Positions 1-20,465 of a stretch of DNA of 64,000 nucleotides are shown here, one piece after another (within the stretch, counting starts at the first letter, position 1; every line of letters begins with the position of its first letter). The stretch lies in sequence record MN445185.1. One strand, written 5' to 3'. Both the position numbers and the translations under genes were made by a program. The notes beneath the pieces are model-generated. The model saw only the letters and a list, made by a program, of their open reading frames with translations. It was not told the DNA's origin and searched no databases.

Positions 1-80
1 TATTAAGATCTTAAAACGCGTGCGGGCGCGCGCGTGATCCTTATTAAGAGATCGTGATCGGACGGAAGACCGAGATCGGG
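1..80. repeat. GATC-dense, CG-rich palindromic segment
   Basis: GATC at 7, 36, 50, 56 and 74; TTAAGATCTTAA palindrome (3-14 region); ACGCG..CGCGT inverted repeat; TATTAAGA repeated at 1 and 42. Confidence 0.45.
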
Positions 81-207
81 TACCCTGTGTATTTTTTACG
101 TGGTTTCCCTATCGTGTGTTCAGACCACCACTCGATGTCCAAAAACCCATAGCTTCGGTGGTCGCCTCCCTGGTCGGTAGACTCTGACAAGTCGACCCAC
201 AACACCA

Positions 208-232
208 ACCCGTCCGGGGACGGATTTTTATT
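208..232 (+). terminator. Intrinsic terminator-like hairpin
   Basis: CCGTC-cggg-GACGG followed by ATTTTTATT. Confidence 0.45.
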
Positions 233-287
233 CCAACGACAAGCTCCACGAAAATCCCCGCAGAGGGACTCACTGCTGTGTGACTCA

Positions 288-327
288 CCGGCTCCTGGAC
301 GCCTACGCCTCGAGCCGGTAATTTTTT
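288..327 (+). terminator. Intrinsic terminator-like hairpin
   Basis: CCGGCTC(288-294)/GAGCCGG(312-318) followed by TAATTTTTT. Confidence 0.5.
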
Positions 328-354
328 GATTACGTGAGTTTGTTGTTATATGCG

Positions 355-930
355 AATAGCGATTGACCGCGCCAATGGTCCAATCACTTTTAAACCCTGC
401 ACGCTAGGGCTCCAAGTCCTGGGACTGATACCCAGGACGCTTTTTCGAAAATACCTACCGTGGTGTCTTCGACAAAGCGCAATCTAACACTGCGTGATTT
501 ATTATGTTCTGGAAAACTTTCGCCGTGGAACAGAACCGGTGAGCGTCGGCGGGGATTCCGACAATCACCACCCATTCAGGTACTCGGTAGATAACCGACC
601 TGCCGACGGTGCTACGTCGGGCGTAGTTCGGTTTGCGAGAGTGTCGAGAAAGTCGACTGCGCACCCATGACAAAATCCGAGTTGACCGTGGCAGCGCCAG
701 AGGACTGGGCAGCGGAGAGACGTCGTTGAACTTACCTCCGATAGTTATCGCTGATTCCGCTCTGGCGTCGGGCCAAAACTGATTCGAATTCGGCGTTGCG
801 TCGAAAAGGGGTCTGCGTGTAGAACCGCAGACTTGGGGGATAACTCCAAAGTGGGGTGATCGGATCTTGACGGCTCGGAACAGACGAGAGGGGTGGGTAC
901 TCCCGTTGTGAAACGCCAGTACCTGGCTGA
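355..930 (+). ncRNA. Candidate large structured non-coding RNA (~580 nt); family unknown, strand inferred
   Basis: No credible ORF. Stems: 416-423/431-438, 584-588/594-598 inside 577-580/599-602, 603-608/615-620, 694-702/760-768, 811-817/826-832, and a GNRA hairpin 904-915 inside 896-900/919-923. Confidence 0.5.
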
Positions 931-984
931 TTAAAATTTACAGATTCTGCGTGAGGTATGATAAACCAAACGGAGAATTAAACC

Positions 985-1560
985 ATGAACTTGTATCGCA
1001 TCGGGTTTTACCGGAACGAGGTACCAGAATCGGTTTTGGTTGTCTTAGCCGAAAACGAGGAGCAGGCCAAATCCTTCTGGCCGGTTAGCGCAGAGCGTAC
1101 AGCGGTTGCGTGCTGCTACGACGGTCCAGTTGCCGCAACGGATGTCGCTGCAGGCGTAGTCCTGAAGATGGGCCGATGGGAAGATTACTCCCATCCCGGT
1201 TTGGAGTTTGTTTCCGAACCTGCCAGACATTCCTGGGAATTTCCCTCAGGCAACACCGAGACGTATTTCGGATTTCAGGTTAAACAACCTTCGACGCTCA
1301 AACTGTACCTGGTGTACAGCGACGCCGCTACCGAAGACTACGTCGATTCCGGAATCATCGTCGGGGCAACAACCCCTGCTGCGGCATTCGCACATTGGGA
1401 CGGTGATAAACCCGGAATCGTTTCGGTCTGTGAGCTACCACTTGAAGCCGGTTTGGTTACGAACATCAAGTGTGAGCAAGGCCAGGAGCTGACTTGGATC
1501 CGCCAGGATTACCTGACGGAAACGACATTCGAGTACACACCGAGGAAGGTGACCCAATGA
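985..1560 (+). CDS. Hypothetical protein with two copies of a small domain also found in 2283-2525
   Basis: 191-aa ORF, SD GGAG, stop overlaps next start (ATGA). Confidence 0.8.
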   Translation: MNLYRIGFYRNEVPESVLVVLAENEEQAKSFWPVSAERTAVACCYDGPVAATDVAAGVVLKMGRWEDYSHPGLEFVSEPARHSWEFPSGNTETYFGFQVKQPSTLKLYLVYSDAATEDYVDSGIIVGATTPAAAFAHWDGDKPGIVSVCELPLEAGLVTNIKCEQGQELTWIRQDYLTETTFEYTPRKVTQ

Positions 1561-2048
1561 CGACGATAGCGTTCGACGGAAAAGTCTTAGCTGCTGACGG
1601 TCAGCTGACCCGCGGGTCGAATATCTGCAACCTGAACACCCAGAAGTTATTCATCTGCCCTTCTGACGAGGAATGGTGGATTACTGGTGAACGGATTGTG
1701 GCGTTCGGAGTAAGCGGTGACATCACAGGACAGTTGGCCCTGCTGGAAACGGTCCGCTTGAGACCCGGCTACAAGGGGTTAACACAAAGCTCGCAGTTAC
1801 CTGCGAAGATGGATTTTACTTTCCTGATGCTTTTGGCCTCAGGAAAAGCGATAGTCGGCGGAAAACGTGAAGACGACGTGACGTTGTGGTGGAGTGAAGC
1901 CACACCACCTCTGGCAACCGGAAGCGGTTACGAGTATGCGTTGGGTGCGATGAAGATGGGCGCGAATGCGGTTCGTGCTGTTGAGATTGCGTCCGAATGC
2001 GATATCTACACCGGTGGTGAGATTAGCACTTACGAACTACGGAGGTGA
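1557..2048 (+). CDS. HslV/proteasome-beta-like Ntn (Thr) protease
   Basis: Start at ATG 1557 gives MTTIAFDGKVLAADGQLTRG; Thr1, Asp13 and Lys29 have the same D-K spacing as HslV D17/K33; ATGSG and CDIYTGG motifs. Confidence 0.75.
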   Translation: MTTIAFDGKVLAADGQLTRGSNICNLNTQKLFICPSDEEWWITGERIVAFGVSGDITGQLALLETVRLRPGYKGLTQSSQLPAKMDFTFLMLLASGKAIVGGKREDDVTLWWSEATPPLATGSGYEYALGAMKMGANAVRAVEIASECDIYTGGEISTYELRR

Positions 2049-2051
2049 ATC

Positions 2052-2102
2052 ATGCGGGAGTCAGAAGCACGCAAGCTTGACCCCATCAATCGCCTGCGAT
2101 AA
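2052..2102 (+). CDS. Possible 16-aa small ORF (MRESEARKLDPINRLR)
   Basis: Strong SD GGAGGTG (2041-2047) before ATG 2052; TAA at 2100-2102. Confidence 0.3.
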   Translation: MRESEARKLDPINRLR

Positions 2103-2140
2103 CGGGGTAGCGCATCCGTATAAACACGTTCAAGAATTCT

Positions 2141-2216
2141 AGGAAAGTGACGCAATTGGTAGCGTACCGGTCTCCAAAACCGGCTGTTTAGAGTTCGAGT
2201 CTCTACTTTCCTGCCA
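2141..2216 (+). tRNA. trnW: tRNA-Trp (CCA)
   Basis: Acceptor AGGAAAG/CTTTCCT; anticodon arm CCGGT-CTCCAAA-ACCGG; T arm TAGAG-TTCGAGT-CTCTA; encoded 3' CCA; 76 nt. Confidence 0.97.
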
Positions 2217-2282
2217 CATTTAGCCAACAAGGCCATGATTCAAAGCAGAATGACACCGAATGTCTAACTGCGGAGAATAATC

Positions 2283-2525
2283 ATGAACTTGTATTTGCTA
2301 GAACGAACTGACGATATCGGGTATGATGAATTTGATTCCATAATCGTGGCGGCTCCTACGGAGCAAGCCGCGTGTGCAATTCCTCCCGACCGTGGTCATT
2401 GGATGGACTGCCGCTGGTTACCGAAAGAGCGCTGGGATGAAGGGCTTACCCTGACCGTTACTCTTATCGGTACTACGCACTATCCTGCTGGGACCGTCGT
2501 TCATGAATCGTTCAATGCTGGCTAA
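2283..2525 (+). CDS. Small hypothetical protein, paralogous domain to 985-1560
   Basis: 80 aa, SD GGAG; MNLYLL...SIIVAAPTEQAA pattern. Confidence 0.8.
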   Translation: MNLYLLERTDDIGYDEFDSIIVAAPTEQAACAIPPDRGHWMDCRWLPKERWDEGLTLTVTLIGTTHYPAGTVVHESFNAG

Positions 2526-3300
2526 ACAGTGGGCTTCGGCCCACTAACCCTATTCGAGCCGTGATACTTACTCAGATTGTGCGGGTTGATGTCCCGCATG
2601 AGCCGGTAGCAGCTCAGACCTACGGTAGACCAATAAATCCGTAGCAGCCAGGTACACAAAGCACCAGGTCGCTTGTACAGGATGCTGGGTATCTGACCGG
2701 TCATAACCTCATTCGATACGAGACACGTTTATGCATGAAATACTCCAGTACATCAGGATGTTGATTTCCAACATCCGGTTCTGGGTATTCAGTCATGTTT
2801 GGTTTACAGGCGATGGGTTTTCCCGTAAGGGCCCCACTTACAGACTGGCGTCTCCACGACAACCGTCCCTAGGGGACAGGCAAGCACCGGCCCATTAAGC
2901 CGCTACGCTACGCCTGTAAATCCACAATCTGATAACCGAATGGGATTGAGTTCCCAGTGTTAGGGTGACTGTGTGTCACCGTAGGCGCGGTACCTCATAC
3001 GGCCGGTACGCCACGAATGTACGTGATAGCGGGTGGTGCTTGGAGACGCTAAGACCTGACCTTACGGACAGGCTCAGAAGAAGAAGTCCATCACCTGTAT
3101 TCAGAAATGAATTTAGGTTAATTATTGGAAGTGGCGAAATCACTTACGTGATAACTTAGTAGTATGCAACGAACAATACCAGAGTGACTTTACGAGGTTA
3201 CTGTGGTATATGTCGGTGCGCCGGGCAACGTGTTGCCGCAGATAAGCCCGAGGGAGCTGAGTGCACTAACACACGCCGGGATGCACCGGCACCTTACAAC
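2526..3300 (+). ncRNA. Candidate structured ncRNA region (one or several RNAs)
   Basis: No credible ORF. Stems: 2528-2545 (UUCG loop), 2580-85/2593-98, 2620-25/2639-44, 2756-63/2769-76, 2803-12/2911-20, 2964-69/2975-80, 3212-19/3283-90. Confidence 0.5.
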
Positions 3301-3370
3301 GGCTTTGTAGCTCAGGTAGGTAGAGCAGCCTCTTCGAGGAAGGTCGCTGGTTCGAGACCGGTCAAAGCAA
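3301..3370 (+). ncRNA. tRNA-like RNA lacking an anticodon loop
   Basis: Acceptor GCTTTG/CAAAGC; D arm GCTC-AGGTAGGTA-GAGC; variable loop AGGTC; T arm GCTGG-TTCGAGA-CCGGT; anticodon arm only 13 nt (CCTC-TTC-GAGG); no CCA. Confidence 0.75.
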
Positions 3371-3450
3371 GAGCAGCGAAGTTAGAGGAATTAACACCCG
3401 ACTCATAATCGGATATTTCGACGGTTCGAATCCCTGCCACTTGCTCGCCC
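3371..3450 (+). pseudogene. Degenerate tRNA-Met/Ile2 (CAT)
   Basis: Anticodon arm CCGA-CTCATAA-TCGG; D stem GTTA/TAAC; GGTTCGAATCC T-loop with broken T stem; acceptor GAGCA/TGCTC; ends GCCC rather than CCA. Confidence 0.65.
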
Positions 3451-3452
3451 TA

Positions 3453-3736
3453 TTTGTGTTATCCTTATCCCGAAGGCATTCGAAATAAGACGCGTATCCA
3501 CACACGGGTCAAGGATAACACGAACCACTTCCGCGGTCACCGTGTCCATTGCCGCCTACCTGCATGGGCTGTCCTCCGACACGGTGACTTCGGGCCAAAT
3601 TACAGACCAGGGCCGTTTGGGTTTTTCTTACGCATCCGTCCAGAGCCACCTCGAGCCCTGGTTTGTTCTCCCTTTTCTGTTCCTAGTTAGCCAACTAAAT
3701 CAATTAAGCCTGGTGCGTTGCCCTGGGAACAGAAAA
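3453..3736 (+). ncRNA. Array of four long-stem, large-loop hairpins
   Basis: Stems 3456-66/3511-21, 3536-46/3578-88, 3603-13/3655-65 and 3673-86/3723-36 (11-14 bp); loops 31-41 nt; stems unrelated in sequence. Confidence 0.65.
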
Positions 3737-3828
3737 ACTTATTCGGTTACACACCGAACCCACCCACGAGGGATATGTCGTGGACTACCAATAGAAGCAG
3801 CAATAGTAGAAGTAAGAAGGAAAGCAAC

Positions 3829-4650
3829 ATGTTTACAGTTAAACGTGTGATTGATGGTGACCGCATTATTACCGAACATGAAAAAGTTCGTATCGGTGAC
3901 CGTAAGTCTCGTGTATTCCGCGAGGCATTAAAAATGCTCGAGAACGAGCGATTCGACATTGTTGTCGATGATGAAAAGTTAGCCCTTAATCCGGGGTTAA
4001 AACGCGTTGCCCCTGATGTGCCTGATCCGAACACCATGCATTTGTCTGACTACTGCAGCTGGTCGCACAGATTATATAAAAGTCAGGTTTATGCACACAC
4101 GTATTTGCGGCAGCTTTTCCCCAACCTTATTATCCCCGATTTGGAAACGGTCGAGGTGTTTAACTGCAACGCACGCGAGTTTATTAGCTACGTGCTAGAT
4201 AATAAGGGCAATGCTATCTTGGTACTGGACACAAGTTCCAGTATACCTGATGCTGTGGCTAGCATACGTGGTGAAATCATCGGTTACGGTACTCCCCCAG
4301 AGAAATTAGGCTGGTACAAACCATCTCCTGATAGCGACATGGCGATCATTGTCTACACTCAGGAAGAACTGCAACAAGTCGAATTAGAGCCTGGCCCATC
4401 TATCGAGTTCACTGATGTCCAGGAGCAGTCGCAGTGGATTAACGGTGAGTCTGTTGTTACTGTTTTAAAAGGCGCTCGCCCTGGCGACCGGTCAGTCGAT
4501 GAACTGATTGGCGCAATGTGCATCGAAGAAGAATCTGGATACGATCCTGATAACCAGATCAGTACCGGTGCGTTGTACGAACTGTTTTATAAAGGCGACG
4601 AAGTCTACGTGGTTAACTCTCACGGTAAGACTACCGACGCCCTTCGCTGA
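3829..4650 (+). CDS. Hypothetical protein
   Basis: ORF 3718-4650; better start is ATG 3829 after AAGGA; the upstream extension overlaps the hairpin array. Confidence 0.85.
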   Translation: MFTVKRVIDGDRIITEHEKVRIGDRKSRVFREALKMLENERFDIVVDDEKLALNPGLKRVAPDVPDPNTMHLSDYCSWSHRLYKSQVYAHTYLRQLFPNLIIPDLETVEVFNCNAREFISYVLDNKGNAILVLDTSSSIPDAVASIRGEIIGYGTPPEKLGWYKPSPDSDMAIIVYTQEELQQVELEPGPSIEFTDVQEQSQWINGESVVTVLKGARPGDRSVDELIGAMCIEEESGYDPDNQISTGALYELFYKGDEVYVVNSHGKTTDALR

Positions 4651-4740
4651 ATTAGCTAACGCCCAGTAGCTATGTTCCTGACGATTAGCCCTCGTCTGAC
4701 CTTGTAAGACCTTGTAGATTTACATGCCAACACCAGGGAA

Positions 4741-4793
4741 GTCCTCACTCTTCGGAGTGAGGACAACTCTTTTATTTTTTTTTGTATTCCAAA
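4741..4793 (+). terminator. Intrinsic terminator
   Basis: GTCCTCACTC-TTCG-GAGTGAGGAC, with a T tract starting a few nt downstream. Confidence 0.85.
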
Positions 4794-4800
4794 TATACAC

Positions 4801-4815
4801 AGATAGATATTACCT
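4801..4815 (+). promoter_or_regulatory. Putative early promoter motif
   Basis: AGATAGATATTACCT, one of 8 related copies; contains TATTAC as in phiKZ early promoters. Confidence 0.65.
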
Positions 4816-4874
4816 AAGTGAGATGAGAAAGCCTCATCTGAATTCTCCCAACTCGACTATAAAAGGTATGCATC

Positions 4875-5825
4875 ATGTACAGACCAAGTAATCCTAGCGC
4901 TATTGAAGGATTAAACCAGGATGGCTTCAGCCTCGCAGAAGCAACCCGCATTCGACCTTTCTTACCTCGCAGATTCTTCCCTTTCGGTTCGTTATACAGA
5001 ACGAATTTCGACGCTTGGGAAGCGATACGTGCTGTAAAAGATGCACTACAGTACAAGAACTTCGAATTCCGATTTGTTTTCAAATGGGGCAACGGCGAAT
5101 TGCTCCACCACTTCGGATTCCAACAGAACGAGTTCATTGAGTATACCTCACCTACGTACCACACCAGGTTCTTAAGTATCGAATTCGTTCGCCATTTCGG
5201 CGATGCACTCTTTACGGAACGGGCTACAGATGAAAACCACGGACGTAGGCTGATGTTAACGAACGGCGCACTGCGCATCAAGATGAATCGTTTACGGGAA
5301 GCGTATAACCAGCTTATCAATCCTGAACCGGTAATGTTTCCAACTGTAGCTGATTTGAACATTACACCGCTCCAGTTACCTGTGGATGTGGATAGACCGA
5401 TTCTGGCAATCCACGCTCTCCAGGCAGGCTATGCAAACTGGTATAAAGAGCACAGTCTCCCGAACACCAGATTGAACATCGCACCGTTTGAGTTATGCCT
5501 GTTCTTAACGTTACGCAAACAACTCGAGCCAGAAAACTTAGACTTGCGTTATCTGGCTAAAACAGATAGCGGTAGTTACTACCCAACGACCTGGATGCTA
5601 GCGGCTGTACTACCCGGCGGTGAAATTATCGGTAACCCTGTCACCGATGTTCAACAGTTACCATCACCGTTAGCACCACCGAAGGATTCAATCTATCCAT
5701 ACGCTTCGTGGTACGCGAGCAGTATTGGCGTGAGATGGTTAATGTTACACGTTCCTGAAGAGGTCTATAATTTATTCCCGCATGAGCAATGGCTCCGTGC
5801 GTATGAAAATCGGTTTGGTTGGTAG
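4875..5825 (+). CDS. Hypothetical protein
   Basis: 316-aa ORF between promoter motif and terminator. Confidence 0.85.
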   Translation: MYRPSNPSAIEGLNQDGFSLAEATRIRPFLPRRFFPFGSLYRTNFDAWEAIRAVKDALQYKNFEFRFVFKWGNGELLHHFGFQQNEFIEYTSPTYHTRFLSIEFVRHFGDALFTERATDENHGRRLMLTNGALRIKMNRLREAYNQLINPEPVMFPTVADLNITPLQLPVDVDRPILAIHALQAGYANWYKEHSLPNTRLNIAPFELCLFLTLRKQLEPENLDLRYLAKTDSGSYYPTTWMLAAVLPGGEIIGNPVTDVQQLPSPLAPPKDSIYPYASWYASSIGVRWLMLHVPEEVYNLFPHEQWLRAYENRFGW

Positions 5826-18741: not shown

Positions 18742-20109
18742 GTGAGAAAGGTACCAAAATTCTACGGAATATCCGGCCGGTTGGTTAGTCAGGATAACTA
18801 TTTGTCCGATTTGCAAATAGAAGCTGCTGCCAAAGGTATTAAACCACCCACTATTATTAACGATGTCGCCGTTAACGGGGATGCGATCGAGGTTGCTGAA
18901 CTTATCGATCGCATGGTACAGAACAGAATCGTTGACGAAGAACTGAACTCTGCACCGATTTGTAGTTTGGATTGTCCGGCACCGATCGCGCATCGTTACA
19001 ATCTCGGTTGTAAGTGTCCGACGTGTGGCTATGTTGTAACTGAACATCGAATTGAATCCGATGTCTGGTTACGTGCACCTGATGAAATGGGTAACTTCGT
19101 CAACCCACGATTCTGGGCAATGTTCAATGCTTTCTTTAATAGCAAGTTGAAGAAGTTTGAACGTAACAAGGTCACTATCGAACGCGGTAATGACTTGATG
19201 ATGTGGATGATTGACCCGTATTACCGTATAGAAGAACCAGACGGTAAACGCGCACATGCTGTGAAACGTGTATTGGAAGAACATGGTTTCGTTCGTGGCT
19301 TGCGCAATCTGGTTGATAACCACGTTAGTATCTTTAACATCCTTACCACGCCAGAAGCCTGGAAGGAAATCTTCGCACCTAATCGGCATAACGCCGCTGA
19401 AGGTGAACGCTTACGTTTACAATGGAAGGAGCTATTCGAAACGCAACGACACGCATTCTTCCCAAGACACTTACCGCTAATCTCCTCTAAACTTATCGTT
19501 ACTGAGGAAGGTCGTCGTGGTGTCATGGTAGACCCAGTGTTCACGGGTGCTATTGATGCGGTGAAAAATATCGCGTTGCTCTATACGCGGCGTAAAGCGA
19601 TCGAACCACGTTTTCTGATTAGTCGTGCTTTGAAAGCGAACCGTCAGTTAACGTACTTCCACATGGACTTCCGTCGTGAGTCTATGGAAGGTAAACCGGG
19701 TGACTATCGTGCGAAATTGGGTTCTACCCACATCCCGTTCGGTGGTCGTGCAACCATCTCACCTATCTCAGAACCACATGATGCCTGGAAGTTAAAAGCA
19801 CCATGGCGTTGGATGGTTGGGTTGATGTCGACCCACATCGAGAACAAACTGCTACGACGCGGTTATTCGTCACGGCAGTGTGAACGTATCGTTGCGAAAG
19901 CGGCAATGCAGTATGACCCGCTTGTAGATGAAATCTTTAAAGAACTGATTCGTGAATCCCCAGGCGGTCTTGGGATCATGGTCATACCGCTACGTAACCC
20001 AACGCTGGTACAGTTGTCTATTCAAACGCTGTACATCGATGAAGTTGTTACCGATGTTAACCAGTGTTCGCTGCGTATCTCTGACCGTGTGATCAAGATG
20101 GCTAACGGT
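18742..20109 (+). CDS. Non-virion RNAP beta' N-terminal subunit (phiKZ gp55-like), exon 1
   Basis: Zn-binding C-x3-C...CKCPTC; GKPGDYRAKLGS..GGRATI; RNPTL; ends MANG at the 5' splice site. Confidence 0.92.
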
Positions 20110-20465
20110 TCGAAAAGAGCCCCATCGGACGGGAAACCTCTGATGCGTATTCTCCTGAAATGCTGGGAAACCCTAAAGCGTATCTACCAGAAATGGGGAC
20201 GAAAGTCTGAAACAACAGATACGATGGCCTACGCTAAACAATACTGCTAACGGTTGTGATAATGGGTAATCAGCAGCGAAGCCTCGTGAGAGGAACGTTC
20301 AACGACTATCGCTGAAATGCGAGTAGGGGTCCCAGTGGACTTCGAAGTGGGAGAACACCTAAGGCGATAGCTATGGTGAAGATATAGTCTGTGCCTTATC
20401 GAGAGATAAGGAGGGTGTCTTAGCACACCTGCTGTATACGGAAACGGTATACGGTGGACAAACAG
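20110..20465 (+). mobile_element. Group I intron (IA-type core), 356 nt, no homing endonuclease
   Basis: P AAATGCTGGGAAA (20158-70); Q AATCAGCAG (20268-76); R TTCAACGACTAT (20298-309); S AAGATATAGTC (20379-89); P7 GACTA/TAGTC; P3 TTCTCC/GGAGAA; P1 with U-G pair at 5' splice site; terminal G at 20465. Confidence 0.93.

What the first reader, a model, noticed from the sequence alone, without database searches (positions are those of the whole stretch)
3301..3370. Intact tRNA body with the anticodon loop deleted
Seen: the invariant tRNA residues are present (U8, A14, GG in the D loop, UUC-A58 T loop, AGGUC variable loop) and the D, T and acceptor stems pair. The anticodon arm is 13 nt instead of 17 and has no 7-nt loop. 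Random decay would not spare everything except the anticodon. Inference: either an RNase P/RNase Z processing signal that frees the flanking ncRNAs, or a tRNA mimic or decoy for tRNA-targeting defences or tRNA-binding enzymes.
Basis: partly seen in the sequence, partly recalled or inferred. Interest (0 to 1): 0.72.

Follow-up and report, generated by a model that had tools for sequence, protein, structure and literature searches.

The report
Anticodon-less tRNA look-alike in jumbo phage
A giant E. coli/Salmonella phage carries a tRNA-shaped RNA gene that has kept every part of a tRNA except a usable anticodon loop; relatives keep the same slot in very different versions, so it looks like a selected tRNA mimic, probably a cutting signal for tRNA-processing enzymes, rather than a dead gene.

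Summary
Window 3301-3370 (+) of Escherichia phage vB_EcoM_EC001, an SPN3US-like jumbo phage, scores as tRNA in Rfam (33.6 bits, cut-off 29). It has an intact acceptor stem, D arm, variable loop and T arm. Its anticodon arm is 13 nt: a 4-bp stem with a 3-nt loop.

It is neither an assembly error nor a recent deletion. Ten Seoulvirus genomes checked directly carry the same arm, and only the loop and other unpaired or wobble-tolerant positions vary. Across Seoulvirus, Machinavirus and Erskinevirus, the slot just upstream of a tRNA(CAU) holds 16 different cloverleaf alleles. None has a canonical anticodon loop.

Acceptor pairs 2-7 and the T stem pair in every allele, and 9 of 12 pairs show compensatory changes. 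A G1·A72 mismatch followed by A73 is invariant. Unlike every canonical tRNA in these arrays, the element has no encoded CCA.

Most likely it is a non-decoding tRNA-derived module, read by RNase P, RNase BN/Z and the CCA-adding enzyme, that punctuates a polycistronic tRNA/ncRNA transcript. A trans-acting mimic or decoy is not excluded. Function is untested, and I found no published description.

The parts
3296..3300 (+). 5' leader ACAAC (ACAAU in most relatives), immediately before G1
   Evidence: ACAAYGG precedes this element in nearly all relatives. It also precedes several other units of the arrays, such as tRNA-His, tRNA-Tyr and the start of the 258-nt insert in Proteus phage 7. The motif is not enriched genome-wide. 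Reading it as an RNase P leader is inference.
3301..3307 (+). Acceptor stem, 5' strand (GGCUUUG); G1 faces A72 (mismatch)
   Evidence: Pairs 2-7 form with 3363-3368. Six of the seven acceptor pairs show compensatory changes across 13 versions, and G1.A72 is present in 13/13.
3308..3327 (+). U8, A9, D arm (GCUC / AGGUAGGUA / GAGC) and A26
   Evidence: Canonical D arm with A14 and G18G19, aligned to the Rfam tRNA consensus.
3328..3340 (+). Truncated anticodon arm, 13 nt: G27, CCUC (3329-3332), loop UUC (3333-3335), GAGG (3336-3339), A43
   Evidence: Within Seoulvirus the loop is UUC, UUU or AUC and position 27 is G or A. SPAsTU has a roughly 39-nt structured insert at the loop position.
3341..3345 (+). 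Variable loop AGGUC
3346..3362 (+). T arm: GCUGG / UUCGAGA / CCGGU
   Evidence: The T stem is paired in 100% of cells, with 3 of 5 pairs showing compensatory changes. U54, U55, C56 and A58 are invariant in all alleles.
3363..3370 (+). Acceptor stem 3' strand CAAAGC, then A72 (mismatched) and A73; no encoded CCA
   Evidence: All canonical tRNAs of the related arrays, and tRNA-Trp of the window, encode CCA. This element and the following tRNA(CAU) do not.
3371..3446 (+). Adjoining degenerate tRNA(CAU) (Met/Ile2 type): G-1 at 3371, anticodon CAT at 3404-3406, C73 at 3446. In EC001 the T stem and 3' acceptor strand no longer pair.
   Evidence: This element gives no Rfam hit in the window, whereas the SPN3US copy scores 30.6 bits and Machinavirus copies 41-48 bits. 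Proteus phage 7 annotates it as tRNA-Ile and the Machinavirus records as tRNA-Met or tRNA-Ile2. The 3' part of the EC001 copy is replaced, as in phage 1252.
3134..3294 (+). Conserved leader block. In SPAsTU and pEa_SNUABM_29 it precedes the full tRNA array; in EC001 it runs straight into the element.
   Evidence: Local blastn gives 83-85% identity to L014 30-193 and L016 3-165. The array tRNAs lie between this block and the element in those phages.
2874..3102 (+). Upstream conserved structured non-coding RNA of unknown family (context; possible 'flanking ncRNA')
   Evidence: Identity to Caitlin, phiEaH2 and an IMG/VR contig is 70-77%. RNAalifold predicts 46 pairs, 12 with compensatory changes. 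There is no Rfam match and no PHROG match for the overlapping annotated ORF.
2141..2216 (+). Canonical tRNA-Trp(CCA) with encoded CCA; the only ordinary tRNA left in this phage's locus

Best explanation
Window 3301-3370 is a non-decoding, tRNA-derived cloverleaf RNA gene. I call it X. It is the surviving member of a formerly larger tRNA operon in SPN3US-like jumbo phages.

Selection keeps the part of a tRNA that the end-processing machinery reads: the acceptor stem, the T arm and the D/T-loop elbow. The anticodon arm is unconstrained.

The proposed mechanism has four steps, all inferred:
1. The region is transcribed on the + strand as one long tRNA/ncRNA precursor.
2. Host RNase P cuts after the ACAAY leader at G3301. 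This detaches the upstream structured leader/ncRNA.
3. RNase P acting on the abutting tRNA(CAU), or RNase BN/Z, cuts after A73 (3370).
4. The host CCA-adding enzyme then tails the roughly 70-nt product. The product cannot decode.

X starts with 5'-GG and has a mismatched 1:72 pair. It may therefore receive CCACCA and be discarded, rather than persist as a stable RNA.

Shown: the structure, its conservation pattern, the missing CCA, the fusion to the next tRNA and the synteny.
Inferred: transcription, the cleavage sites, the tailing and the purpose.
For: 1. Intact tRNA body. X scores 33.6 bits against Rfam tRNA (cut-off 29), with all tertiary-interaction nucleotides present and a 13-nt anticodon arm.

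2. Same arm in close relatives. Ten Seoulvirus genomes carry it. All five variable sites within X fall at position 27 (mismatched), two loop positions, C51U (still pairs with G63) and T-loop position 60.

3. Persistence across genera. The syntenic slot upstream of tRNA(CAU) holds 16 alleles of 65-108 nt in Seoulvirus, Machinavirus and Erskinevirus. Most fold as four-way cloverleaves without constraints, and all but pEa_SNUABM_10 do so with the acceptor and T stems constrained. None has a canonical anticodon loop. ARAGORN gives marginal calls for only three, and those have C33/C37, an A34 anticodon or a 2-nt 'anticodon'.

4. Covariation in the top half. Pairs 2-7 and the T stem are paired in 100% of cells, and 9 of 12 pairs show changes on both sides. 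No shuffle out of 500 reaches the observed percentage paired or covariation score, and sliding the partners drops pairing to 24-53%.

5. Processing context.
- The ACAAY leader precedes X.
- X ends at A73, directly before G-1/A1 of the next tRNA.
- X lacks the encoded CCA that every canonical tRNA in these arrays has.
- No terminator-like site lies on the + strand between 1900 and 4000.
- Flanking genes and tRNAs are on the + strand.
- Conserved structured RNA lies upstream.

6. Retention after array loss. In the SPN3US group the canonical tRNAs between the leader and X are gone, yet X is kept intact. Meanwhile the neighbouring tRNA(CAU) has a broken T stem in EC001.

7. Precedent. Plant-mitochondrial t-elements and mascRNA/menRNA are tRNA-like elements without a functional anticodon. 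They are cut by RNase P and RNase Z to form the ends of flanking RNAs (PMC1920247; PMC11693755). CCACCA tagging of tRNAs with unstable acceptor stems is reported for E. coli (PMC5824355).
Against: No expression or end-mapping data exist for this locus; I found none in the literature.

A pure processing role does not obviously explain two things. One is why the G1.A72 mismatch and A73 are invariant while every other acceptor pair changes. The other is why X alleles are swapped as whole cassettes between genomes whose flanks are 86-99% identical.

In array-bearing relatives, canonical tRNAs could already supply RNase P sites, so it is unclear what X adds there.

The SPN3US group is only about 5% diverged. 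Retention of X within that group is therefore weak evidence on its own.

The folding-energy z-score is not significant.

The covariation alignment was built by hand from excised top halves, which favours the structure somewhat.
Confidence: 0.45

Rival explanations
1. X is a trans-acting tRNA mimic. After processing and CCA addition it is a stable small RNA that binds, titrates or is modified by a tRNA-binding factor. Candidates are a host enzyme, a defence effector that recognises the tRNA top half or 3' end, or a phage protein. The mismatched 1:72 pair keeps it away from EF-Tu and the ribosome.
For: The G1.A72 mismatch plus A73 is invariant in 13/13 versions while all other acceptor pairs covary.

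A second, unrelated anticodon-less cloverleaf in relatives (Z: L004 1427-1503, L016 1236-1317) also has an N1.A72 mismatch.

X alleles behave as exchangeable cassettes, which is a pattern common at phage-host conflict loci. Flanks are 86-99% identical where X is unalignable, and X is 88-97% identical where flanks have diverged.

X is retained after the canonical tRNAs were lost.
Against: No identity elements for any aminoacyl-tRNA synthetase are conserved: positions 2:71 and 3:70 covary, the D arm is replaced in several alleles, and there is no G3.U70.

No partner protein is evident next to X, and the neighbouring ORFs match only PHROGs of unknown function.

There is no presence/absence variation to correlate with host or defence systems.

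The mosaic pattern could simply reflect the general recombination-prone nature of phage tRNA arrays.
Confidence: 0.27
2. X is a neutral tRNA pseudogene: a dead tRNA that lost its anticodon loop by deletion and has simply not yet decayed.
For: The locus is a zone of tRNA gain, loss and decay. The SPN3US group has lost six or more tRNAs, and the adjacent tRNA(CAU) is degenerate. Relatives carry several other odd tRNA-like relics. GenBank annotators disagree over it: none, tRNA-OTHER or tRNA-Asp.
Against: Stems 2-7 and the T stem are perfectly paired in all 13 versions, despite changes on both sides at 9 of 12 pairs.

All 16 alleles keep a cloverleaf-type fold with a GG-bearing D-like loop and a canonical T loop.

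The non-decoding state is shared by three genera whose neighbouring protein is only 27-35% identical.

The within-Seoulvirus changes avoid every base pair.
Confidence: 0.13
3. X is a working decoding tRNA with an unusual anticodon arm, or its true anticodon loop is restored by RNA editing or splicing.
For: Proteus phage 7 annotates it as tRNA-Asp. ARAGORN calls three distant alleles as Pro(cgg), Ile(aat) or '???'.
Against: A 3-nt loop cannot present an anticodon. The loop letters differ among near-identical genomes (UUC, UUU, AUC). The ARAGORN-called alleles lack U33 or a purine at 37, or have mismatched stems. No intron-like insert is present in EC001. The 1:72 mismatch is atypical for elongator tRNAs.
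Confidence: 0.02

Closest known systems
Plant mitochondrial t-elements (tRNA-like processing signals; Forner et al. 2007, PMC1920247)
   Same: Both are non-canonical cloverleaves that keep the GGTTCRANYCC T-arm motif and an acceptor stem, lack a decoding role and lie inside polycistronic transcripts. t-elements are thought to direct RNase P/RNase Z cuts that create the ends of neighbouring RNAs. X has GGTTCGAGACC.
   Different: The system is different (organelle mRNAs versus a phage tRNA operon) and there is no sequence relationship. t-element ends were mapped experimentally, whereas X's ends are only predicted. X additionally has an invariant G1.A72 mismatch and an almost fully canonical tRNA core.
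mascRNA / menRNA (tRNA-like RNAs cut from MALAT1 and MEN-beta; Rfam RF01684; PMC11693755)
   Same: Both have a tRNA-like acceptor stem, T arm and elbow with a compact loop in place of the anticodon loop. mascRNA and menRNA are cut by RNase P, which forms the 3' end of the upstream ncRNA, then by RNase Z, and are then CCA- or CCACCA-tailed. They are not aminoacylated.
   Different: They are eukaryotic, have a reduced D stem-loop and lack the junction linker nucleotides, whereas X keeps U8, A9, A26 and the variable loop. RF01684 does not match X. This is an analogy, not homology.
Canonical phage-encoded tRNAs and phage T4 dimeric tRNA precursors lacking encoded CCA
   Same: X lies in a phage tRNA cluster, directly fused to the next tRNA without encoded CCA. 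From my own knowledge, T4 tRNA(Pro)-tRNA(Ser) is arranged the same way and depends on host RNase P, RNase BN and the CCA-adding enzyme. Also from my own knowledge, T4's cluster holds two small stable RNAs (species 1 and 2) of still unknown function.
   Different: X has no anticodon loop and cannot decode.
tmRNA tRNA-like domain and bacterial Y-RNA-like YrlA (RF02553; PMC4201824)
   Same: Both are bacterial or phage RNAs that mimic the tRNA acceptor/T-arm/elbow without an anticodon.
   Different: ARAGORN finds no tmRNA, and X has no G3.U70 and no tag reading frame. In YrlA the RNA ends lie on the anticodon-stem side, and RF02553 does not match X. It gives only sub-threshold hits that overlap ordinary tRNAs in relatives.

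Membership tests
tRNA (Rfam RF00005) | Covariance-model score at or above the gathering score | tested here: met
   33.6 bits against a cut-off of 29, matching model positions 1-71.
tRNA (Rfam RF00005) | Acceptor, D and T arms with the conserved tertiary nucleotides (U8, A14, G18G19, U54-U55-C56, A58) | tested here: met
   All are present. The acceptor stem has 6 bp plus a G1.A72 mismatch.
tRNA (Rfam RF00005) | 17-nt anticodon arm with a 7-nt loop, U33 and a purine at 37 | tested here: not met
   The arm is 13 nt with a 3-nt loop. ARAGORN does not call it. It is therefore not filed as a functional tRNA.
tRNA (Rfam RF00005) | 3' CCA (encoded or added) and aminoacylation | not testable with these tools
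   CCA is not encoded, unlike in all canonical tRNAs of the related arrays. Addition and charging need wet-lab tests.
tRNA pseudogene (neutral relic) | No purifying selection on structure | tested here: not met
   Pairs 2-7 and the T stem are 100% paired, with 9 of 12 pairs showing compensatory changes. Within-genus changes avoid all pairs.
tRNA-like processing elements (t-element / mascRNA type; a functional class) | tRNA-like acceptor stem, T arm and elbow without a functional anticodon, embedded in a longer transcript | tested here: met
   For structure. For context between conserved non-coding RNA and further tRNA-like sequence on one strand.
tRNA-like processing elements (t-element / mascRNA type; a functional class) | Ends generated by RNase P and RNase Z that coincide with the termini of the flanking RNAs | not testable with these tools
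   No transcript-end data were found.
mascRNA-menRNA (RF01684) | Match to the family model | tested here: not met
   No hit at E <= 10 in 1-5000 or at E <= 1 in the whole window.
tmRNA | tRNA-like domain with G3.U70 plus a tag-peptide reading frame | tested here: not met
   ARAGORN finds no tmRNA, and position 3:70 is C:G.
YrlA / bacterial Y RNA (RF02553) | Match to the family model; tRNA-like module closed at the acceptor end | tested here: not met
   There is no hit in the window, and X has its ends at the acceptor stem.

The most novel reading that the evidence does not exclude
X belongs to a previously unrecognised class of phage-encoded, anticodon-less cloverleaf RNAs, together with the Z-type elements of related phages. 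The class is marked by an N1.A72 mismatch. Its members act in trans as tRNA top-half mimics, for example as sponges or decoys for a host tRNA-directed defence or tRNA-end-modifying enzyme, or as ligands of a phage factor. The cassette-like turnover of X alleles would then record an arms race.
Probability: 0.2. Interest if true: 0.85.

Novelty: new variant of a known kind. Interest (0 to 1): 0.55.

Why it matters
Phage tRNA genes are usually discussed only as codon-usage helpers or as replacements for tRNAs cut by host defences. This element shows that a jumbo-phage tRNA operon also maintains, under selection, a tRNA-shaped RNA that cannot decode. It does so in many interchangeable versions that share one odd hallmark, the G1.A72 mismatch followed by A73.

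If X is a processing signal, it would be a bacterial-virus counterpart of plant-mitochondrial t-elements and of the MALAT1/mascRNA module. It would also explain how the unannotated structured RNAs of this locus get their ends.

If it acts in trans, it would be a new kind of phage tRNA mimic.

Either way, genome annotations currently treat it inconsistently (nothing, 'tRNA-OTHER', 'tRNA-Asp', or a spurious protein ORF). The case is directly testable in laboratory E. coli or Salmonella hosts with the existing SPN3US genetics.

Tried and rejected
1. Assembly error or recent deletion: rejected. The same arm is present in 10 genomes read directly.

2. Protein-coding reading: rejected. ORFs over the element match no PHROG family (window 3184-3408 +; SPN3US gp263 on the - strand; window 2971-3159). 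The ORF is also not conserved among relatives.

3. Other RNA families: rejected. No Rfam family other than tRNA matches, whether over 1-5000 at E <= 10 or over the whole window at E <= 1.

4. More distant relatives: little was added.
- An IMG/VR scan with the conserved tRNA(CAU) anticodon-arm pattern returned only the known genomes plus one metagenomic contig.
- Scans with the neighbouring protein and with its alignment added nothing.
- A tblastn search of the phage collection reached Klebsiella phage Eowyn, where there is no synteny.

5. ACAATGG as a promoter or genome-wide motif: not enriched in the window (7 matches against 8.8 expected). One weak sigma-70-like site lies far upstream, and there is no + strand terminator.

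6. Parent tRNA of X: no clear closest isotype among the array tRNAs, with best identities of 0.63-0.75 spread over Met, Asn, Phe and Leu. blastn against complete E. coli genomes found nothing.

7. Other top-half-like elements in the 64-kb window: none beyond tRNA-Trp, X and one chance-level hit inside a gene.

8. Literature on SPN3US-like phages, phage pseudo-tRNAs and tRNA-like elements: no description of this element. The SPFM paper counts 'one tRNA'. One search failed on a too-short term.

9. Thermodynamic significance: not significant for X alone.

Full report
**Where the window comes from.** Bases 2000-4000 are 100% identical to positions 2000-4000 of Escherichia phage vB_EcoM_EC001 (MN445185; Seoulvirus, SPN3US species; a 240-kb jumbo phage). 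They are 95-98% identical to about 30 Salmonella, Escherichia and Proteus relatives. Window and genome coordinates coincide.

**The observation.** The sequence at 3301-3370 reads as follows:
- acceptor 5' strand GGCUUUG, then U8 and A9
- D arm GCUC/AGGUAGGUA/GAGC, then A26
- 13-nt arm G-CCUC-UUC-GAGG-A
- variable loop AGGUC
- T arm GCUGG/UUCGAGA/CCGGU
- acceptor 3' strand CAAAGC, then A72 and A73

Rfam's tRNA model matches it end to end at 33.6 bits (cut-off 29) and skips the anticodon loop. ARAGORN reports only tRNA-Trp at 2141-2216. The unconstrained minimum-energy fold is the cloverleaf with a 4-bp stem and a triloop, but the energy is not unusual for its composition.

Three points were missed: position 1:72 is a G.A mismatch, no CCA is encoded, and the next tRNA-like element starts immediately after A73.

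A structural descriptor search of my own finds tRNA-Trp, this element and two overlapping GU-rich, chance-level hits inside the coding gene at 3849/3891-3971. Shuffled windows give 0.33 hits on average.

**How annotators treated it.** EC001 annotates nothing here. SPN3US calls it 'tRNA-OTHER' and overlays a minus-strand hypothetical ORF. Proteus phage 7 calls it tRNA-Asp and the following element tRNA-Ile. The overlapping ORFs match no PHROG family. The SPFM phage paper counts a single tRNA per genome (PMC6614189). I found no paper that discusses the element.

**Close relatives.** I read ten Seoulvirus genomes directly, and all carry the same 13-nt arm. Within X the only variable sites are:
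- position 27 (G or A, opposite A43 and unpaired either way)
- two of the three loop positions (UUC, UUU, AUC)
- C51U in EC001, which still pairs with G63
- T-loop position 60

No change breaks a pair. The more divergent Seoulvirus SPAsTU has the same body, but with a well-folded insert of about 39 nt ending in a GAAA tetraloop where the loop would be. So the arm can shrink or grow while the body stays fixed. This also rules out an assembly error.

**Distant relatives.** In Machinavirus and Erskinevirus (Erwinia and Salmonella jumbo phages) the locus is a full tRNA array of Tyr, Gln, Asp, Ile, His/Glu and Ser. It is followed by spacers, then X, then tRNA(CAU), then tRNA-Asn.

Local blastn shows that the block at EC001 3134-3294 is the leader that precedes the array in SPAsTU and pEa_SNUABM_29. 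In the SPN3US group the array between the leader and X is missing, and tRNA-Asn is also gone.

The slot immediately upstream of tRNA(CAU) always holds a cloverleaf. I extracted 16 alleles of 65-108 nt falling into about five unrelated designs:
- a canonical D arm with a short hairpin (EC001; pSal-SNUABM-04; IMG/VR contig L012)
- a class-II-like form with a long variable arm and a degenerate anticodon arm (Huxley; pEa_SNUABM_6)
- a compact form with a CCCGG-UCGGU-CUGGG hairpin and a second hairpin capped by GUAA or other loops (Caitlin; phiEaH2; ChrisDB; pEa_SNUABM_4 and _29)
- a further form (pEa_SNUABM_10 and _43)

Most fold as four-way junctions without constraints, and all but pEa_SNUABM_10 do so with the acceptor and T stems constrained.

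None has a canonical anticodon loop. ARAGORN calls only three of them, and each call is aberrant: Pro(cgg) with C33 and C37, Ile(aat) with a mismatched stem, and a 2-nt 'anticodon'.

**Selection on the top half.** I excised the acceptor strands and the T arm from 13 distinct versions and counted pairs.
- Pairs 2-7 and all five T-stem pairs form in every sequence.
- Nine of the 12 pairs show changes on both sides.
- Overall pairing is 91.7%, against 71.5 +/- 2.0% in shuffles.
- No shuffle out of 500 reaches the observed pairing or the covariation score.
- Sliding the partners by 1-3 columns drops pairing to 24-53%.

The only non-pair is 1:72, which is G.A in 13 of 13 versions and is followed by an invariant A73 and G. 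The T loop keeps U54, U55, C56 and A58 throughout. Because I built this alignment by hand around the structure, it leans towards that structure; the slide control and the number of independent pair types argue that the signal is real.

The neighbouring protein is only 27-35% identical between EC001 and Machinavirus. The non-decoding state has therefore persisted over deep divergence.

**Processing context.** Every canonical tRNA in these arrays, and tRNA-Trp of the window, encodes 3' CCA followed by a short spacer. X and the following tRNA(CAU) do not.

X ends at A73. The next base, G, pairs with C73 of the tRNA(CAU), giving that tRNA an 8-bp acceptor helix. An RNase P cut for the downstream tRNA would therefore leave X ending exactly at its discriminator base.

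X is preceded by ACAAY in nearly all genomes, and the same motif precedes several other units of the arrays. It is not a genome-wide motif.

No terminator-like site lies on the + strand between 1900 and 4000.

Upstream, 2874-3102 is a conserved structured RNA without an Rfam family, with 46 predicted pairs of which 12 show compensatory changes. In phiEaH2 and the IMG/VR contig it is followed within about 10 nt by a canonical tRNA.

**Interpretation.** The parts of a tRNA that are conserved in X are the ones that RNase P, RNase BN/Z and the CCA-adding enzyme read (established knowledge). The parts needed for decoding, and for most synthetases, are free to vary.

The closest functional analogues are plant-mitochondrial t-elements (PMC1920247) and mascRNA/menRNA (PMC11693755). 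Both are tRNA-like elements without a usable anticodon whose cleavage makes the ends of flanking RNAs.

I therefore favour a cis-acting, tRNA-shaped punctuation module. I recall that a 5'-GG start combined with a destabilised acceptor end is the signature for CCACCA tagging by CCA-adding enzymes (Wilusz et al. 2011). The mechanism and its occurrence in E. coli are summarised in PMC5824355. That gives a concrete, testable prediction for the fate of X.

**What this reading does not explain.** It does not explain the invariant G1.A72 mismatch. A second, unrelated anticodon-less cloverleaf in relatives (Z: L004 1427-1503, L016 1236-1317) also has an N1.A72 mismatch.

It also does not explain why X is exchanged as a cassette:
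- pSal-SNUABM-04 versus Huxley has flanks 86-99% identical, but X is only 64% identical, close to the level seen between unrelated sequences in these global alignments.
- Huxley versus pEa_SNUABM_43 is 99% identical upstream, but only 55% within X.
- pEa_SNUABM_29 versus ChrisDB and phiEaH2 shares X at 87-88% (core 91-97%) while the upstream flanks are at baseline.

These features keep a trans-acting mimic or decoy seriously in play. A decoy for anticodon nucleases in particular is unlikely, because there is no anticodon loop and the triloop drifts freely.

A neutral pseudogene is disfavoured by the covariation. A decoding tRNA is essentially excluded.

**Novelty.** tRNA-like processing elements and tRNA mimics are known kinds. 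A selected, anticodon-less cloverleaf with an invariant G1.A72 mismatch, CCA-less and fused to a tRNA(CAU) in jumbo-phage tRNA operons, appears to be undescribed. I rate it a new variant of a known kind, of moderate interest. The rating would rise if a trans-acting role is found.

Noticed in passing
window 2874-3102 (+): A conserved structured non-coding RNA of about 230 nt with no Rfam family. It is 70-77% identical to blocks in Erwinia phages Caitlin and phiEaH2 and in an IMG/VR contig. RNAalifold predicts 46 pairs, 12 with compensatory changes, including the hairpins GUCCCUAGGGGAC and GGUGACUGUGUGUCACC and a long-range helix GGGUGGUGCUU/AAGUCCAUCACC. EC001 annotates a 62-aa ORF (2971-3159) over it that matches no PHROG family.
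   Followed up: partly
window 3371-3446 (+): The tRNA(CAU) that follows X has an 8-bp acceptor helix (G-1:C73), as tRNA-His does, and no encoded CCA. In Seoulvirus its acceptor stem carries a conserved bulge. In EC001 (and phage 1252) the 3' part is replaced (CCCTGCCACTTGCT), so the T stem no longer pairs. In Huxley the anticodon loop is mutated to CCCAUAC.
   Followed up: partly
L004 1427-1503, L015 1326-1402, L017 1304-1380, L016 1236-1317: A second family of anticodon-less cloverleaves ('Z') lies just upstream of X in Machinavirus and pEa_SNUABM_29. It has a T loop UUCAACU, an N1.A72 mismatch and a CCA-like 3' end. It is absent from the window.
   Followed up: partly
L004 945-1048; L015 843-940; L016 1648-1745; L007 1290-1409: Further oversized tRNA-like elements of 98-120 nt occur in relatives' arrays. 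One type has a 7-bp acceptor stem, a 6-bp T stem and an encoded ACCA ('Y'). Another has a canonical D arm plus a long structured insert ('W', annotated tRNA-Ile(aat) in Stratton). Rfam tRNA does not reach E <= 1 on those scanned (L004, L007).
   Followed up: no
L002 2803-3059 (Proteus phage 7), also MET_P1, SPLA5c and phage 1252; insertion point = window 3295/3296: A 258-nt non-coding insert lies between the leader and X. It is flanked by the direct repeat ACAATGG and is absent from EC001 and SPN3US. It contains the motif GGGCGGAAGCCNGGGCGTTCCC, which is shared with spacers of pEa_SNUABM_29 and pSal-SNUABM-04.
   Followed up: partly
window 3455-3520 (+): A long hairpin directly after the tRNA(CAU), GUGUUAUCCUU...AAGGAUAACAC, appears to covary with UGCAUUGCCC...GGGCAGUGCA at the equivalent place after tRNA-Asn in pSal-SNUABM-04 (read by eye, not counted). 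The CGCC motif that follows each of these tRNAs may have mediated the loss of tRNA-Asn in the SPN3US group.
   Followed up: no
window 20090-20411 (+): A group I catalytic intron (Rfam RF00028, 69.4 bits, full-length match).
   Followed up: no
L004 226-300, L015 118-192: The phage tRNA-Gln(UUG) has a U1.U72 mismatch. So 1:72 mismatches also occur in an otherwise canonical, CCA-encoding tRNA of these arrays.
   Followed up: no
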